Sequence record: ON190025.1
Direction: 5' to 3' (one strand)
Length of the DNA: 64,000 nucleotides
Both the position numbers and the translations under genes were made by a program. The notes under the pieces were generated by a model that was given only the letters and a program-made list of their open reading frames with translations, made no database searches and was not told the origin of the DNA. Of this stretch, positions 12,630 to 56,517 are shown piece by piece. The number at the start of each line of letters is the position of its first letter. The first letter of the stretch is position 1.

Positions 12630-13043
12630 TTACAGACCGATTGCTAGTTTGAACAACTGAGACGCCTTACCACCATCGAAAACTTTACCTGTAGCTTTTA
12701 GAGCGCCCATTAGTTTACCCATGTCACGCATAGAATCAGCACCAGTTTCTAGAACAAAGTTAGAAACGAACGTGTCTAGATCTGATTCAGAGATTTTTGC
12801 AGGTAGTAGAGACTCAAGAACTGCGTTTTCTGCGTTCAGAATGTCTACATGATCGCCTTGTGCGTGTTCAAGAGCAAGTTTGTTGTTGTCAATCGCGCTT
12901 GAGATTACTTTGATGCAAGACTCGTCATCGTGTTTTTGACGACGGTCAAGTTCACCCATAATGACACCGAGTACAGACGCAACTGCGTTGTTACGGTCTT
13001 TACGAGCTTGTAGGCGTGTTGTTTTAATTGTTTCGATGATCAT
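12630..13043 (-). CDS. GatB/YqeY-domain protein
   Basis: AENAVLESLLPAKISESDL...MRDMGKLMGALK...DGGKAS. Confidence 0.85.
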   Translation of the reverse strand: MIIETIKTTRLQARKDRNNAVASVLGVIMGELDRRQKHDDESCIKVISSAIDNNKLALEHAQGDHVDILNAENAVLESLLPAKISESDLDTFVSNFVLETGADSMRDMGKLMGALKATGKVFDGGKASQLFKLAIGL

Positions 13044-13453
13044 ACTATACCACTCTCAATTTTTCTGTTGTCAATAATGTGTTTGATTGTGAAGCCCATT
13101 TGACTAATGCCTTTCAAAGCTTCTTCGATGAATGATAACACATCTTTCATGTGTTGAAAAGTAGCAATTGCACGTTGAAGATATTCATCACCCGCAAGAG
13201 CATATTTCATTTCACTCTTTTCTACGATGAAATCACAAACTTCATCGTCATGTTTGCCGCTATAAAAGAGCCAGCGGTCTTTTCTCACAGCTTCCATTTT
13301 CATTTCAGCTTTGATAAGTAGTTGTCTTGCATCGGCTCGGTATGCAAGCCACTTCGCATGAAGAACGGGAATTCGAATAGCTGCTGTTTCTAAAGCAGTT
13401 GTGTCAATTTTCACGTCTTCGTGATATTCAATTTTTAAATCTTGTAGCTTCAT
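13040..13453 (-). CDS. uvsY: UvsY recombination mediator
   Basis: EDVKIDTT-x-LE...LHAKWL...FYSGK...KSEMK...GFTIKHI; 137 aa. Confidence 0.96.
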   Translation of the reverse strand: MKLQDLKIEYHEDVKIDTTALETAAIRIPVLHAKWLAYRADARQLLIKAEMKMEAVRKDRWLFYSGKHDDEVCDFIVEKSEMKYALAGDEYLQRAIATFQHMKDVLSFIEEALKGISQMGFTIKHIIDNRKIESGIV

Positions 13454-13471
13454 AATAACCTCGCGTCATCA

Positions 13472-13501
13472 AGTATACATTTCATCATTGGTTGCTTAAA
13501 C
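13472..13501 (-). promoter_or_regulatory. Class II (GTTTA-type) promoter for uvsY
   Basis: GTTTAAG-17-TATACT. Confidence 0.65.
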
Positions 13502-13502
13502 A

Positions 13503-13572
13503 CTAATCCCTCTAATACTTCTAATATCACTAAAAGCACTAATACTACTAAGATGAGACGGAATTTTTCCGC
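13503..13572. repeat. 9-bp periodic CTAA array plus short palindrome; 61 bp duplicated (inverted) at 56161-56221
   Basis: CTAA at 13503, 13512, 13521, 13530, 13539, 13548, then GACGGAATTTTTCCGC; 60/61 identity with copy 2. Confidence 0.95.
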
Positions 13573-13598
13573 CTCTTACCGTTTTTCGCTTCGCGTAT

Positions 13599-13624
13599 AA
13601 AAAAAGCCCCGAAGGGCTCTTTTA
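13599..13624 (-). terminator. Terminator of the 34-35 operon
   Basis: Minus strand AGCCC-TTCG-GGGCT-T7. Confidence 0.9.
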
Positions 13625-16315
13625 TTTCATTGCAAAGTCGATTGCAGTGAAGTTGTCTTCAAACGAACTAGCAACATTGACTTCAGTAACAATTGGGAAA
13701 GCCCACATTACTTGATTTTCAACGGCTGTTTCATCTTTGTATCGAAGTATCAACTTATCATCATCAGCATTCCATCTAAAAGACTTGTCTGCGTTTGTGG
13801 TGTAATAACCTACACCCTTTGATGTCTGATATGTCGGATCATCTTCTGGGTTTATTACACCGAAATAGTTGTTAAACTTATCAGCAAACGCTTGATGTTG
13901 TGCATCTGTCCAATCATGTGGTAGAATATACCCCTGCAATAAAACCCATTGATTGTTTGAAGCAGGAAACCCGTACACTCTGTCAACATTGATATATGTA
14001 GATGTTCGACTACCGTCTGATAATCTCAGAGTTCTATAGTCACCAGATGAATTCTTGACACGTACACTGAAATATAAGAAGCTATTTTGCTTGTCTATAG
14101 CATTAACCCATAACGATAAGAAGTATGGTCGAGATGGATCGATTGATACTTCTTGCATTTCAATTGGAGATGATGAGCCTGCTGTACGTGTGAAACACTT
14201 TTCACCGCCTGAAAGTACATAATTACCCCATTGAACGTTGTCAATTTCTTGTACTGGCATATTAATACCTGCATACAAGTTTGAATCTGCGTTATATGCT
14301 CGCCACCAGCTATCGTCATCAACTACGTTACCTGTAATCGGTGAATTGACAATCTCTTGAGCAGCGATACCGTTTATGTTCGAAATCATATGAGGTATAC
14401 CACTCGGGGTTGACATTCCGCCTTTAGTCAATATGACGTAATCAAAGTACTCTGGTTGTAAGTCAGACCAAACTCCAAATTTAACTGCACCTGTTGGTAC
14501 TTGTACGAAAAATTCTTGAGTTTCTTTTTTCTCTGCACTGTAAAAATGAATATTCTGTCTGCCTACTTCATCGCCAACTACGTTGTAGAATCGAAGATTC
14601 GCCATTTTGTCTGCATTCGCGATTGCTGAATTTCGATCAATACATGCACGAGCTTTGTAAATCAAGTACTGTCCGTCGATTACACCATAATCTGAAAGAA
14701 GATAACGTTTATCAGTAGGAACAGTCATTGTTTCGAGTAAAGGAATTCCGTACCCGTTTGAACCAATCCCTGCTTTATCTTCGAATGCAGTATCAACAAC
14801 ACTGTCACCGTCAGATTCATGGTCGAACATACAACGATCATATACAATACCTAATTGGCCTGTCCCGAATGCACAGTAACTATAACTGTATTGACTGAAG
14901 TAAGAGCTACCGCGATACTCAATCGGGTGATACTGTTGAATTGCAGCATCTACCGCAGAATCTGCGTACATTGACCCATTTGATAGAATAACAAACGGCT
15001 CTGTTGTTAACCCGTTCAGCCCGTTGATGAAGTTGCTACGTTCTGTAGAACTACTCAGAAGATATTTTCTATTAGTTTTGACTGTCATATCGTCGTTGAA
15101 TATAATCAAACGAACTTGATATTGTTGTTTAGCTTCGGGTGTGAATAGACTAACATCATTCAAATAACATGATGCTAGATTCGAACTACCGTTCGCGACA
15201 CCTGTTGCTAACAGTCTGATATTATTATTTGAAAAATCTCTGATATGTCTAGCCGACACTTCATATTCACCGATTCTTGAACCGACGGGAGCATAAATCC
15301 ATAATTCTGCTATATTTACGTTAATACCCGGTCCCGGGAATGTCGTAGTCGCGTCTGGCCAAGAACGTTTAGCACCGATAGCCCAATACCAATTTGATAT
15401 ATCGACTGAACCATCTGCTAAAGTACTAGCTGAAACGCTGAATTCAATACCACCCCAATCGTTTGCAGTGCTTTCGATGTAAACAGGTTCATAACCCCTA
15501 ACCCCACGAGCGGTAGCATCGTAATCGCCAGTATAGTTCTTGACGATTTGCGAATCCGTGATCATGAAGTTCGTCAACCAACGTTTTCCTGTTGGTAATT
15601 TCCCAGCATCGTTTGTGTAGCAACAATACCAGTACATGCTACTTGACGAAAGAGTACTAGGCGTTGTGAAACGAGCATAGTGACGTTTCCAAAGAATCCC
15701 GTCAACTATTATTTCGTTTCCTGCTGATTCGAACACGTCACCCGCAGTATGTTCGCCTAATGTATAATCATTATTGGAACCGTCATACCAACGAGCGTGA
15801 AATATAGCTGCTGTGTCGTGATCAGCGTCTACTTCATACCCAACCCAACATGACAATGTGTATGTTTTGTTTGGTTTTAAACGCGATTGTGGCACTTGAA
15901 AACGTAATTGGTCTTCTAGTGCCGCAGTCGGTTGCTCAACGACGTATTTTGATGACCCTGGGTTTTCTTTCTCAACAATAACCCAAGAACCGATTTTTGC
16001 ATTTTGTTCAGTGACGTATTCCCCACCCGCTAAGTTACCGTTTGTAAGATATTGACCTACATCAATAGCTGCAAAGTTACTACTTTGCTTCCAGATGTTT
16101 GTTACATCCAATTCTGGGTAATGAAGCTTGAATTGGAATTTGCCGTCTTCACGGCGAAATTCCTCAAGTGAGTTCAACGCACTGAATTTTTGTTCAACGT
16201 CGGGATTTGTCCCGACGCTGCGTGCTTCAGCATCGGAGGTGAAAAACACACCTCCTGTTGAATCATGGCGAAAGATTAATAGCCAATCGCCGTCACGTTT
16301 AAGTCTTTCGTACAT
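13622..16315 (-). CDS. 35: Long tail fibre hinge gp35, expanded with extra domains
   Basis: Central region matches T4 gp35 (LSDYGVIDGQYLIYKA...NLRFYN...VQVPTGAVKF...GGMS...NGI); follows gp34. Confidence 0.85.
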   Translation of the reverse strand: MYERLKRDGDWLLIFRHDSTGGVFFTSDAEARSVGTNPDVEQKFSALNSLEEFRREDGKFQFKLHYPELDVTNIWKQSSNFAAIDVGQYLTNGNLAGGEYVTEQNAKIGSWVIVEKENPGSSKYVVEQPTAALEDQLRFQVPQSRLKPNKTYTLSCWVGYEVDADHDTAAIFHARWYDGSNNDYTLGEHTAGDVFESAGNEIIVDGILWKRHYARFTTPSTLSSSSMYWYCCYTNDAGKLPTGKRWLTNFMITDSQIVKNYTGDYDATARGVRGYEPVYIESTANDWGGIEFSVSASTLADGSVDISNWYWAIGAKRSWPDATTTFPGPGINVNIAELWIYAPVGSRIGEYEVSARHIRDFSNNNIRLLATGVANGSSNLASCYLNDVSLFTPEAKQQYQVRLIIFNDDMTVKTNRKYLLSSSTERSNFINGLNGLTTEPFVILSNGSMYADSAVDAAIQQYHPIEYRGSSYFSQYSYSYCAFGTGQLGIVYDRCMFDHESDGDSVVDTAFEDKAGIGSNGYGIPLLETMTVPTDKRYLLSDYGVIDGQYLIYKARACIDRNSAIANADKMANLRFYNVVGDEVGRQNIHFYSAEKKETQEFFVQVPTGAVKFGVWSDLQPEYFDYVILTKGGMSTPSGIPHMISNINGIAAQEIVNSPITGNVVDDDSWWRAYNADSNLYAGINMPVQEIDNVQWGNYVLSGGEKCFTRTAGSSSPIEMQEVSIDPSRPYFLSLWVNAIDKQNSFLYFSVRVKNSSGDYRTLRLSDGSRTSTYINVDRVYGFPASNNQWVLLQGYILPHDWTDAQHQAFADKFNNYFGVINPEDDPTYQTSKGVGYYTTNADKSFRWNADDDKLILRYKDETAVENQVMWAFPIVTEVNVASSFEDNFTAIDFAMK

Positions 16316-55285: not shown

Positions 55286-56113
55286 ATGACAATCACTAAA
55301 GCAGAAATGAAAGCTATCGCAATCGACCTTATGTCTGGTAACAACTTGATGAAGCGCGATCTGATTGCAGAAGGTTGGTCATTTGAATTTTCAAAACGTA
55401 AAGCTGCACTAGGTGATTGTAACTACCGTACTAAAACGCTACGTATTTCTGAAGAATTCTTGAACGCTCGTACTAAAGAAGAGCAAATCAACACAATCAC
55501 TCACGAAATGGCTCATGCGATTGCTTACACTGATTACAACGAACGTGGTCACGGTGCTATCTGGAAGCGTGTACACCGTCAACTAGGTGGCGATGCAAAG
55601 CGTTGCTCAACTGTATCTAACCCTGATGCTGTAGATAGCAAGTACGTTGTTTTCTTCGAAAACGCTCAAGGTGAACTTGAAGTAGTTCAGAAAATGGATC
55701 GTTTGACTAAGCGTTTTCAACCAGTACACATCAAGGCTCTATACTTGAAAGGTCGTAAAGCTGAAACTGAAGGTCAACTTCGTTGCGTTGCAACATCAAC
55801 ATTCAACGCTATCAAAGCAGATCACGAAGCTAAGAAAGCTGAAAATACTAAAGCAGTTGAACCTGTAGCAGCACCTGCACCGAAAGCTGAAAAGAAAGCT
55901 GAAGCGCCTAAGCCTGCTAAGAAAGTAAACGCACGTGGTCAAGCTGCTCGTGACGCAATCGCAGAAATCGTAATGAATACTACTCACAAAGGTTGTAAGT
56001 CAGTGTCATTTGAACAGCGTGGTAAATACAAAGATTGGTACATCATTATTGAACTAGAAGCTCACACAATCGAAAAGCGTCTAGACACTTTCAAAAAATC
56101 TCACGGTTTATAA
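55286..56113 (+). CDS. SprT-like zinc metalloprotease
   Basis: ALGDC...RISE, HEMAH, GHGAIWK...GG...C; Ala/Lys/Pro linker. Confidence 0.85.
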   Translation: MTITKAEMKAIAIDLMSGNNLMKRDLIAEGWSFEFSKRKAALGDCNYRTKTLRISEEFLNARTKEEQINTITHEMAHAIAYTDYNERGHGAIWKRVHRQLGGDAKRCSTVSNPDAVDSKYVVFFENAQGELEVVQKMDRLTKRFQPVHIKALYLKGRKAETEGQLRCVATSTFNAIKADHEAKKAENTKAVEPVAAPAPKAEKKAEAPKPAKKVNARGQAARDAIAEIVMNTTHKGCKSVSFEQRGKYKDWYIIIELEAHTIEKRLDTFKKSHGL

Positions 56114-56131: not shown

Positions 56132-56153
56132 AGCCCCGAAAGGGGCTTTTTTT
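56132..56153 (+). terminator. Intrinsic terminator
   Basis: AGCCCC-GAAA-GGGGC-T7. Confidence 0.92.
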
Positions 56154-56160
56154 GGTTTGA

Positions 56161-56221
56161 GCGGAAAAATTCCGTCTCATCTTAGTAGTATTAGTGCTTT
56201 TAGTAATATTAGAAGTATTAG
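56161..56221. repeat. Second copy (inverted) of the 61-bp 9-mer array element
   Basis: Reverse complement equals 13512-13572 with one mismatch. Confidence 0.95.
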
Positions 56222-56229
56222 TAAGATTT

Positions 56230-56259
56230 GTTTAATAACCACCTTGGCAGACGTATAAT
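56230..56259 (+). promoter_or_regulatory. Class II promoter
   Basis: GTTTAA-18-TATAAT. Confidence 0.7.
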
Positions 56260-56277: not shown

Positions 56278-56517
56278 ATGATAACGATATACACAATTCC
56301 CAACTGTGACGGCTGTCGTCACGCAATTTCCCTCTGTAAGTTCAAAAACGTCCCGTACACTGTAATAGAGTTACAGTCTCAATCTGATATCGATAAATTG
56401 CATGAGAAACTTGGTGGGGTGCGCAACATTCGCGTGCCTCTTGCTATGCATGGTGATACATACATAGGTCATCTTCCAGAACTCAAGCAATGGGTTGATA
56501 ACCAGACATATAAATAA
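56278..56517 (+). CDS. Glutaredoxin (NrdC/NrdH-like)
   Basis: IYTIPNCDGC, RVPLAM and YIG motifs. Confidence 0.85.
   Translation: MITIYTIPNCDGCRHAISLCKFKNVPYTVIELQSQSDIDKLHEKLGGVRNIRVPLAMHGDTYIGHLPELKQWVDNQTYK
56509..56516 (+). promoter_or_regulatory. Late promoter TATAAATA
   Basis: Upstream of gp24. Confidence 0.85.

What the first reader, a model, noticed from the sequence alone, without database searches (positions are those of the whole stretch)
13503..13624. Duplicated 61-bp element with exact 9-bp periodicity upstream of the uvsY promoter: candidate origin
Seen: six CTAA-initiated 9-mers and GACGGAATTTTTCCGC (CGGAA/TTCCG palindrome). The element is repeated 60/61 identical and inverted at 56161-56221. 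Both copies have the same architecture: terminator, element, TGTTTAA-type promoter, gene (uvsY or glutaredoxin). Established: T4 ori(uvsY) depends on the uvsY middle promoter, and T4 oriE has iterons. Inference: iteron-like protein-binding array at replication origins or an activator enhancer.
Basis: partly seen in the sequence, partly recalled or inferred. Interest (0 to 1): 0.66.

Follow-up and report, generated by a model that had tools for sequence, protein, structure and literature searches.

The report
Six-copy hairpin plus TTAG-array phage element
The two copies are real, but they are two of six evenly spread copies of a conserved, apparently undescribed ~100-base non-coding signal (two small hairpins, then TTAG every nine bases) kept by all KVP40-like Vibrio phages; it may mark where they start copying their DNA, but its function is not shown.

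Summary
The window is a KVP40-like T4-type Vibrio phage, 100% identical to PVA23 over the 1.2 kb tested. The 61-nt repeat is exact at 13512-13572 and 56161-56221 (60/61).

The unit is larger and oriented. On the coding strand of the flanking genes it reads: GCGAAGC-type mini-hairpin, about 14 nt, a 9-bp hairpin with an AAA loop, TCATC, then six TTAGNNNNN units. There are six copies per genome, not two. They sit at the same six intergenic sites in the seven genomes compared, always co-oriented with their neighbours: uvsY, nrdH, wac, gene 1, a lipoprotein ORF and one further ORF.

- Spacing is more even than chance (P about 0.007).
- The array strand almost lacks C (2.4% against 22% G).
- The array is among the least stable duplex stretches of the genome.
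- Hairpin variants are compensatory.

Four copies follow a terminator and five precede a promoter at variable distance. One runs straight into a start codon.

Best reading (about 0.35): a signal used in unwound form, probably a replication origin or helicase/primase loading site. The T4 ori(uvsY) analogy fails in detail: no MotA, and the array lies upstream of the promoter. RNA-platform and duplex-operator readings remain open.

The scan found this element before at the wac copy (s1-160700).

The parts
13498..13551 (-). Copy 1 (uvsY copy): array of six TTAGNNNNN units; unit 6 overlaps the -35 region
   Evidence: model match 13498-13580, 98.2 bits. Duplex stability of the VH7D equivalent is in the top 0.6% least stable 54-bp windows.
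13552..13556 (-). Copy 1: TCATC linker between hairpin and array; its first two bases overlap the foot of the hairpin. CATCTTAGT is invariant in all 41 copies aligned.
13555..13575 (-). Copy 1: main hairpin, 9-bp stem (one G.T/G.U pair on the sense strand), AAA loop
13587..13595 (-). Copy 1: mini-hairpin box CGCGAAGCG (GCGAAGC core)
   Evidence: 27/41 copies carry GCG-N1-2-AGC at a fixed distance; 0.017 expected per window
13599..13623 (-). Copy 1: intrinsic-terminator-like hairpin with T runs on both strands, right after the stop codon of the gene 35 homologue (ORF 13622-16315, -)
13472..13502 (-). Copy 1: putative uvsY promoter (TGTTTAA at 13496-13502, TATACT at 13472-13477); uvsY ORF is 13040-13453 (-)
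   Evidence: It does not reach the E. coli consensus threshold of the scan.
56132..56153 (+). Copy 2 (nrdH copy): intrinsic terminator after the SprT-like ORF 55286-56113; it takes the place of the mini-hairpin box
56159..56178 (+). Copy 2: main hairpin (one base shorter at its foot than copy 1)
   Evidence: (match 56153-56235, 89.8 bits)
56182..56235 (+). Copy 2: array, five TTAG units plus a degenerate sixth (TTTG) that overlaps the -35 (TGTTTAA 56229-56235)
56229..56259 (+). Copy 2: sigma-70-like promoter (-10 TATAAT at 56254-56259) in front of nrdH/glutaredoxin (56278-56517); gp24 and gp55 homologues follow

Best explanation
The element is a cis-acting signal that works when the DNA is unwound, on the strand that is also the coding strand of the neighbouring genes.

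Proposed mechanism:
- Two small hairpins (the GCG-N-AGC mini-hairpin and the 9-bp hairpin) mark the 5' edge.
- They nucleate binding of a multimeric protein onto the adjoining 54-nt track. That track melts easily, is nearly C-free and so stays unstructured, and offers six TTAG registers 9 nt apart.
- The six evenly spread copies most likely mark the replication origins, or helicase/primase loading sites, of KVP40-like phages.
- In four copies an upstream terminator would keep incoming transcription out.
- In five copies a promoter firing away from the array would help to open it through negative supercoiling. This is the logic known for transcriptional activation of oriC and lambda ori.

Shown: the anatomy, copy number, synteny, orientation, spacing, composition bias and low duplex stability.

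Inferred: single-strandedness, protein loading and origin function.
For: - Exactly six full copies in the nearest complete genome, 90-99 bits with a covariance model and no weaker copy at E<=10.
- Six places per record in nearly all of 51 KVP40-like phage records.
- Across seven genomes compared, the copies sit next to the same genes, always co-oriented with both neighbours in KVP40's annotation.
- The minimum gap between copies is 25.9 kb on 247 kb. P about 0.007 for six random points.
- Strand asymmetry: in the five spacer positions of the units C is 2.4% and G 22%, against a genome C of 19.7%.
- One stem pair is G.U/G.T on the sense strand in 21 of 41 copies. On the other strand it would be an A.C mismatch.
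- Hairpin variants CGG/CCG to CCC/GGG, and an AA/TT to TT/AA flip with an inserted inner hairpin, keep the pairing.
- With DNA parameters the sense strand folds as mini-hairpin plus hairpin plus an unstructured track.
- The array is in the top 0.03-0.64% least stable 54-bp duplex windows genome-wide, and is the local minimum within +-1.5 kb at all six sites.
- Mini-hairpin loops vary as GAA, GCA, GTTA, GTCA and GATA. From my own knowledge, this is the G-N(1-2)-A rule of very stable DNA mini-hairpins, and it does not fit the RNA GNRA rule.
- The terminator before and the outward promoter after the element leave it largely untranscribed. That suits a DNA signal better than an RNA one.
- T4 uses at least five dispersed origins of about 100 bp, one of them at uvsY (PMC3016281).
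Against: - There is no functional data of any kind.
- T4 origins share no sequence motif, and T4 places the unwinding element downstream of the promoter (PMC3016281). This would therefore be a different design.
- One copy lies inside an operon with no terminator or promoter, and its last units supply the Shine-Dalgarno sequence and start codon of a lipoprotein gene. That looks like an mRNA feature.
- The covariation rests on few independent events.
- C avoidance and G.U pairs are explained equally well by a function in RNA.
- The even spacing is a single post-hoc statistic on one conserved gene order.
- No candidate initiator protein was identified.
Confidence: 0.35

Rival explanations
1. RNA element. 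The sense strand is transcribed as part of read-through or polycistronic mRNA. The hairpin nucleates a multimeric RNA-binding protein on the unstructured, C-free UUAG track. The logic is that of the T4 gene 32 operator, or of HutP/TRAP on spaced UAG triplets. The effect would be on mRNA processing or stability, on translation, or on read-through into the next gene.
For: - Always co-oriented with the flanking genes.
- G.U pairs are tolerated only on the sense strand.
- The spacer is C-poor.
- The sense RNA folds clearly better than shuffles while the antisense RNA of copy 1 does not (z -3.1 and -5.1 against -0.4).
- Conservation is highest at the hairpin foot and units 1-2 and decays towards unit 6, as expected for nucleation followed by spreading.
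- In the lipoprotein copy the array ends on the SD and start codon and must be in the mRNA.
- The mini-hairpin box is read as the last codons (..KSEA..) of the upstream ORF in two copies.
Against: - Four of six copies sit directly behind an intrinsic terminator. Five lie upstream of the promoter that serves the next gene. The main transcripts would therefore lack the element.
- No Rfam family matches.
- No RNA data exist.
- Even genome-wide spacing has no obvious meaning for an mRNA element.
- Mini-hairpin loop variants do not follow the RNA GNRA rule.
- The gene 32 leader of this phage carries no TTAG array, so gp32 is not indicated as the partner.
Confidence: 0.25
2. Duplex-DNA operator or enhancer. 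Six 9-bp direct repeats would bind a phage DNA-binding protein side by side, as MetJ or omega-type ribbon-helix-helix repressors do on 8- or 7-bp repeats. This would switch the adjacent promoters on or off after AsiA has disabled -35 recognition. The protein could be the missing functional analogue of MotA.
For: - Five of six copies lie just upstream of a sigma-70-type promoter, and two overlap the -35.
- The downstream genes uvsY and gene 1 are middle-mode genes in T4 (my own recollection, not checked here).
- AsiA is present and MotA absent. The literature leaves open whether KVP40 has a MotA analogue (PMC2988021, PMC1524935).
- Copies within a genome change together. K566 has TTCG in units 3-4 of five of its six copies, and 1.081.O has its own unit set. 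This is as expected if all copies must fit one protein.
Against: - The distance from the array to the -35 varies from 0 to about 27 nt, and one copy has no promoter.
- TGTTTAR promoters occur 11 more times without the element.
- A duplex site does not explain the near-absence of C on one strand at all five spacer positions.
- It does not explain the compensatory hairpin variants.
- It does not explain the even spacing.
Confidence: 0.2
3. Recombination module or passive repeat. This would be a PeSL-like terminator/promoter cassette, or a REP-like selfish repeat, kept similar by gene conversion, with no function beyond mediating exchanges.
For: - PeSL/PmSL cassettes (stem-loop, promoter, SD) are described in nt-1 and KVP40, including around 51 kb of nt-1 where one copy lies (PMC4122927).
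- There is concerted evolution of copies within a genome.
- The gene 1 copy is duplicated in tandem in phage 1.081.O.
Against: - The number and places of the copies are fixed across the seven genomes compared, with no sign of spread.
- CATCTTAGT and the TTAG registers are invariant or nearly so, although the flanking 1.2 kb is only about 80-83% identical in KVP40- and nt-1-type phages.
- Repeats of about 100 bp in both orientations are a recombination hazard in a T4-type phage, yet they are retained.
- Four of six copies lie in core regions rather than hyperplastic ones.
Confidence: 0.07

Closest known systems
T4 oriF (uvsY) and oriG (gene 34) R-loop origins
   Same: About 100 bp, non-coding, several per genome, one next to uvsY. 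Each combines a promoter with an A+T-rich, easily unwound stretch (PMC3016281).
   Different: T4 origins share no sequence. They use a MotA-dependent middle promoter, and the unwinding element lies downstream of that promoter. Here the six copies are one conserved sequence family, MotA is absent, and the array lies upstream of the promoter or has none.
T4 oriE iterons and iteron origins of plasmids and phages
   Same: A cluster of evenly spaced short direct repeats in a non-coding stretch (PMC3016281).
   Different: The period is 9 bp with only a 4-base constant core. The composition is strand-asymmetric, a hairpin is attached, and there are six dispersed copies. No initiator is known. Even for T4 the link between the iterons and oriE activity is unproven (PMC3016281).
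PeSL / PmSL cassettes of T4-like phages (Arbiol 2010; Comeau 2014, PMC4122927)
   Same: Intergenic stem-loop terminator followed by a sigma-70-like promoter and SD. Repeated in the genome and described for nt-1 and KVP40.
   Different: PeSLs are many, loosely conserved and concentrated in hyperplastic regions. The text of that paper, as far as it is held, mentions no hairpin-plus-TTAG array. This element is an extra, far better conserved module inserted between terminator and promoter, with exactly six syntenic copies.
T4 gene 32 translational operator; HutP and TRAP RNA sites
   Same: A structured nucleation site followed by an unstructured track of short repeats. HutP has six spaced UAG triplets for a hexamer. 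(Own knowledge.)
   Different: Those are single sites in the leader of the regulated mRNA. Here most copies lie outside the main transcript, and the period is 9 nt rather than 5-7.
Bacterial oriC unwinding region (GC cluster, DnaA-trios, AT-rich DUE, transcriptional activation by an outward promoter)
   Same: A GC-rich element followed by a periodic TAG-containing, easily melted, strand-specific track next to a promoter firing away. (Own knowledge.)
   Different: No DnaA boxes. Only every third triplet fits the trio motif. It sits in a phage genome and is present six times.
Dispersed ~150-bp structured repeat of Aeh1-like Aeromonas phages (seen here in PX29; scan notes s1-157112, s1-160609)
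   Same: Another T4-like lineage, reported to have AsiA but no MotA (Aeh1; PMC2988021), with about seven well-spread non-coding structured copies. Minimum gap 16.7 kb on 222 kb, P about 0.011 by the formula worked by hand.
   Different: Unrelated sequence: no match to the covariance model. It lies next to different genes. Only a short GCG-YCA-GCG hairpin motif is shared.

Membership tests
T4 oriF/oriG-type origin | A+T-rich DNA unwinding element | tested here: met
   All six arrays are in the top 0.03-0.64% least stable 54-bp windows and are local minima.
T4 oriF/oriG-type origin | Unwinding element lies downstream of the priming promoter | tested here: not met
   The array lies upstream of the promoter in five copies, and there is no promoter in one.
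T4 oriF/oriG-type origin | MotA-dependent middle promoter | tested here: not met
   No MotA N- or C-terminal domain in the nearest genome while AsiA is found. The controls for MotA rang nowhere, so absence rests also on the literature (PMC2988021, PMC1524935).
T4 oriF/oriG-type origin | Drives autonomous replication / early replication peak | not testable with these tools
   No infection time-course DNA data. The only run found is an assembly-level DNA holder.
Iteron-type origin | Evenly spaced direct repeats | tested here: met
   Six units at an exact 9-bp period; 0 expected by chance.
Iteron-type origin | Cognate initiator protein binding the repeats | not testable with these tools
   No candidate was identified. 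A K566 against 6E35.1a proteome comparison gave too many differences.
PeSL cassette | Stem-loop terminator directly upstream of a sigma-70-like early promoter, SD and start | tested here: inconclusive
   This context is present at four of six copies. However, the conserved element is an additional 80-100 nt between the two parts, and two copies lack the terminator or the promoter.
PeSL cassette | Many copies, mostly in hyperplastic regions, linked to indels | tested here: not met
   Exactly six copies at fixed syntenic sites, four of them in core gene regions.
Any Rfam RNA family | Match reaching the family's gathering score | tested here: not met
   The best hit scores 26.3 bits against a threshold of 60, E 0.36.
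Structured RNA/ssDNA hairpin | Base pairs kept through compensatory change | tested here: met
   Two pairs switch GC to CG in 3-4 sequences, and one alternates G.U and G-C. Overall 80.6% of cells are paired against 35-44% when slid. Support is modest because independent events are few.
Long self-folded array hairpin (UUAG pairing with UUAG) | Spacer positions of units 1/5 and 2/4 pair more than chance | tested here: not met
   60.0% paired against 59.8% in shuffles, with no excess covariation, despite the RNAfold prediction.

The most novel reading that the evidence does not exclude
KVP40-like phages, which have AsiA but no MotA, define their replication origins by one conserved sequence module present six times. 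The module is read in single-stranded form by a dedicated, still unknown multimeric initiator or helicase loader. Aeh1-like Aeromonas phages evolved an analogous dispersed module independently. This would be a sequence-specified multi-origin system in T4-type phages, unlike the motif-less origins of T4.
Probability: 0.25. Interest if true: 0.8.

Novelty: new variant of a known kind. Interest (0 to 1): 0.6.

Why it matters
How T4-type phages other than T4 start replication is essentially unknown. So is what replaces the MotA middle mode in phages that keep AsiA alone (PMC2988021, PMC1524935). Here a single, sharply defined sequence module marks six places in a 247-kb genome and is conserved across a whole group of aquaculture-relevant Vibrio phages.

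That gives a direct experimental handle. One oligonucleotide serves for pull-downs and footprints. Six known coordinates serve for marker-frequency and transcript-end mapping. Copies can be deleted one by one.

Whatever the answer (origin, RNA platform or operator), it would reveal a trans-acting factor that is not yet annotated. If the element proves to be only a passive repeat, it still needs masking: several public annotations call small false ORFs across it.

Tried and rejected
- **Expression data.** The run search found no RNA run, only one assembly-level DNA holder. Read laying was therefore not used, because contigs cannot show ends or depth.
- **Rfam.** Nothing near threshold.
- **Coding.** The L-x-x frame through the array has no start codon and is not kept open between copies. 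TAG (sense) or TAA (antisense) closes one frame per unit (reading).
- **Array self-fold.** RNAfold predicts a long G.U-rich hairpin, but pair counts equal the shuffles, so it was rejected. RNAalifold predicts only the main hairpin.
- **Promoter inside the element, or antisense promoter.** None found (inspection).
- **Special promoter class.** TGTTTAR promoters also occur without the element.
- **gp32 as partner.** The gene 32 leader has a different repeat and no TTAG array.
- **Finding the trans factor.** I compared K566 (TTCG variant in five copies) with its 99%-identical relative 6E35.1a. This gave 47 diverged and 31 unique ORFs, which is not informative.
- **Wide pattern scans.** No host counterpart was seen, but the scan was not exhaustive.
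- **Specific pattern scan.** It found only KVP40 and one metagenomic contig whose match proved a weak 23.8-bit model hit.
- **Homology or shared positions with Aeromonas phage PX29.** No model match, and different neighbouring genes.
- **Literature.** Miller 2003 (KVP40 genome paper) is not held, so I cannot exclude that it mentions the repeat. The supplements of the PeSL paper are not held. Two Schizotequatrovirus genome papers mention nothing of the kind.

Full report
**What the window is.** The 1.2 kb around the finding is 100% identical to Vibrio phage PVA23 and 99.7-99.8% to VH7D, phi-Grn1, ValKK3 and others. These are KVP40-like T4-type phages of about 247 kb. The window's own assembly is not held. 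The nearest record, G001 (246,964 bp, the size of VH7D), was used for genome-wide work.

**Observation.** The 61-mer occurs at 13512-13572 (+) and 56161-56221 (-) with one difference, and none is expected by chance. The pair extends to 71 nt at 93%. CTAA recurs at an exact 9-bp period six times.

uvsY is the - strand ORF 13040-13453, and the gene 35 homologue ends at 13622. Read in the direction of the genes, the order at both copies is as follows:
- stop codon and intrinsic terminator;
- the element;
- a TGTTTAA-type -35 and a -10;
- the gene.

**Full anatomy.** I aligned 41 copies from seven genomes: VH7D-like G001, KVP40, nt-1, 6E35.1a, 1.081.O, K566 and F86. On the sense strand the unit has four parts.
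1. A GCG-N(1-2)-AGC box, mostly GCGAAGC. It is present in 27 of 41 copies at a fixed distance, against 0.017 expected per window. In the nrdH copies and some uvsY copies the terminator hairpin sits in its place.
2. A purine-rich spacer of about 14 nt ending in GAG.
3. A hairpin with a stem of up to 9 bp and an AAA loop.
4. TCATC and six TTAGNNNNN units. CATCTTAGT is invariant in all 41 copies. Conservation falls from unit 1 to unit 6.

**Copy number and distribution.** BLAST finds six copies in G001. A covariance model built from the alignment finds the same six at 90-99 bits and nothing else at E<=10.

KVP40, nt-1, 6E35.1a, 1.081.O and K566 have six copies each. BLAST found five in F86. Of 51 phage records with the element, all Vibrio phages of this group, nearly all show six places. 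A specific pattern scan of IMG/VR found only KVP40 and one metagenomic contig whose match proved a weak 23.8-bit model hit.

In KVP40's annotation the copies lie in six places:
- between gene 35 and uvsY;
- between 12-2 and wac;
- between KVP40.0061 and nrdH;
- between gene 3 and gene 1;
- between KVP40.0251 and a lipoprotein-like ORF, KVP40.0252;
- after KVP40.0135.

In every case the element's sense strand is the coding strand of both neighbours. The same neighbours recur in the other genomes.

**Context.**
- Four copies follow an intrinsic terminator.
- Five precede a sigma-70-like promoter, but the gap between the last unit and the -35 ranges from 0 to about 27 nt.
- The lipoprotein copy has neither. 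Its units 5-6 provide the AGGAG and the start codon.
- In two copies the GCGAAGC box is read as the last codons of the upstream ORF.
- TGTTTAR-N-TAnnnT promoters occur 15 times in G001 and only four follow an element. The promoter type is therefore not tied to it.

**Evidence on how it acts.**
- *Structure.* The main hairpin keeps pairing through CGG/CCG to CCC/GGG changes. In F86 it does so through an AA/TT to TT/AA flip with an inserted inner hairpin. Pair counts give 80.6% paired cells against 35-44% when slid. Two pairs show changes on both sides. One pair is G.U in 21 copies and G-C in 14. That pair, and U.G pairs in 1.081.O and F86, would be mismatches on the opposite strand. Independent events are few, so this support is moderate.
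- *Strand asymmetry.* At the five variable positions of the units C is 2.4%, G 22%, A 44% and T 32%. The genome has 19.7% C. A duplex binding site with free spacers would not avoid one base on one strand at all positions. A strand that must stay unstructured, or that is often exposed, would.
- *Melting.* By nearest-neighbour energies all six arrays fall in the top 0.03-0.64% least stable 54-bp windows of the genome. Each is the local minimum within 1.5 kb.
- *Spacing.* Gaps are 55.6, 51.3, 25.9, 26.0, 42.8 and 45.3 kb. The chance that six random points leave a minimum gap this large is 0.007. The order is conserved, so this is one observation, not many.
- *Folding.* With DNA parameters the sense strand gives mini-hairpin, hairpin and an open track. 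With RNA parameters the array also pairs with itself through G.U pairs. Neither RNAalifold nor pair counts (60.0% against 59.8% in shuffles) support that fold.
- *Concerted change.* K566 carries TTCG in units 3 and 4 of five copies, while its 99%-identical relative 6E35.1a has TTAG. 1.081.O and F86 have their own unit sets in all copies. This shows gene conversion, co-evolution with one partner, or both.

**Regulatory background.** AsiA is present (154.8 bits). Neither MotA domain is found. The family search rang in no control either, so absence rests also on the literature. KVP40 and nt-1 have asiA but no recognisable motA, and whether a functional analogue exists is open (PMC2988021, PMC1524935). 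T4 oriF and oriG are a MotA-dependent promoter plus a downstream unwinding element of about 100 bp. T4 origins share no motif, and oriE has 12-nt iterons of unproven role (PMC3016281).

**Weighing the readings.**
- *DNA signal used in unwound form.* This explains the most features together: low stability, strand asymmetry, strand-specific hairpins, even spacing, and the placement between a terminator and an outward promoter. I prefer it as an origin or primosome-loading site, at about 0.35. It is not a T4 oriF-type origin. Two defining features of that type were tested and not met.
- *RNA platform.* This explains orientation, G.U pairs, C avoidance and the lipoprotein copy. It is at odds with the terminators and with the position of the promoters (about 0.25).
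- *Duplex operator, perhaps for a MotA substitute.* This fits the promoter proximity and the concerted change. It does not fit the variable distance, the promoter-less copy or the strand bias (about 0.2).
- *Passive or PeSL-like repeat.* This is unlikely, given fixed number and places and near-invariant core bases (about 0.07).

**Novelty.**
- Rfam has nothing.
- The PeSL paper on nt-1 and KVP40 describes terminator-promoter cassettes but, in the text held, no such module.
- Two genome papers on this group mention no repeats or motifs.
- The KVP40 genome paper could not be read.
- Within this scan, the same element was already reported from the wac copy (s1-160700). My results agree with that note.
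- They add the orientation rule, the strand bias, the stability ranking, the spacing test, the mini-hairpin, and the failed membership in the T4 oriF class.

**A parallel.** Following scan notes on Aeromonas phages, I found in PX29 (Aeh1-like) seven dispersed copies of an unrelated ~150-bp structured non-coding repeat. They are again well spread and lie next to other genes. The literature lists Aeh1 as AsiA-positive and MotA-negative (PMC2988021). It is not homologous, but it suggests that dispersed structured modules are a recurrent solution in these large T4-type genomes.

Noticed in passing
Aeromonas phage PX29 (GU396103.1) around 22.2, 38.9, 77.0, 106.2, 135.5, 175.5 and 219.25 kb (loci L343-L354): Seven dispersed copies (82-88% identical over 74-155 nt) of a ~150-bp non-coding repeat. 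It has a GTCGC-GYCA-GCGAC hairpin, a 13-bp-arm inverted repeat and a GC-rich hairpin. Spacing is even: minimum gap 16.7 kb, P about 0.011 by the formula worked by hand. The sequence is unrelated to the Vibrio element and lies next to different genes.
   Followed up: partly
Phage 1.081.O (MG592456.1) 207126-207196 and 207290-207362; loci L158/L172: The copy in front of gene 1 is duplicated in tandem, 164 bp apart. This is the only change of copy arrangement seen among the seven genomes.
   Followed up: no
Phage K566 (OZ196521.1), five of six copies; loci L149, L154, L159, L164, L169: Units 3 and 4 read TTCGAGATA twice instead of TTAG units. The 99%-identical phage 6E35.1a keeps TTAG. This is a recent sweep of one variant through the copies, by gene conversion or co-evolution with a partner.
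   Followed up: partly
G001 13261-13824 and 68953-69381 (L175:13261-13824, L178:8953-9381): Two unrelated upstream ORFs end in the same residues K-S-E-A followed by 1-5 more. These residues are encoded by the element's GCGAAGC box, so the element supplies their C-terminal codons and stop.
   Followed up: no
G001 91256-91510: A clear AsiA homologue (154.8 bits) with no detectable MotA domain in the genome. This is the known AsiA-without-MotA state of KVP40-type phages, whose middle-mode activator, if any, is still unknown (PMC2988021).
   Followed up: partly
G001 181440-181525 (upstream of gene 32): The gene 32 leader carries AAAATACAA three times plus a run of ACTATA-type repeats just before the start codon. 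This may be this phage's version of the gp32 translational operator.
   Followed up: no
Element copies in records OZ195777, OZ196285, OZ196521 and others, and PV740454: Public annotations call small 'hypothetical protein' ORFs of about 30-70 aa across the element. An example is VPHK566_0299, 90 nt. These are probably false genes created by the open L-x-x frame of the array.
   Followed up: no
window 55286-56113 (+): The ORF upstream of the nrdH copy has a SprT-like metalloprotease domain (E 9e-19).
   Followed up: no
window 13599-13623: The terminator after gene 35 has A/T runs on both sides, so it could stop transcription from either direction. The consensus scan lists it on the + strand.
   Followed up: no
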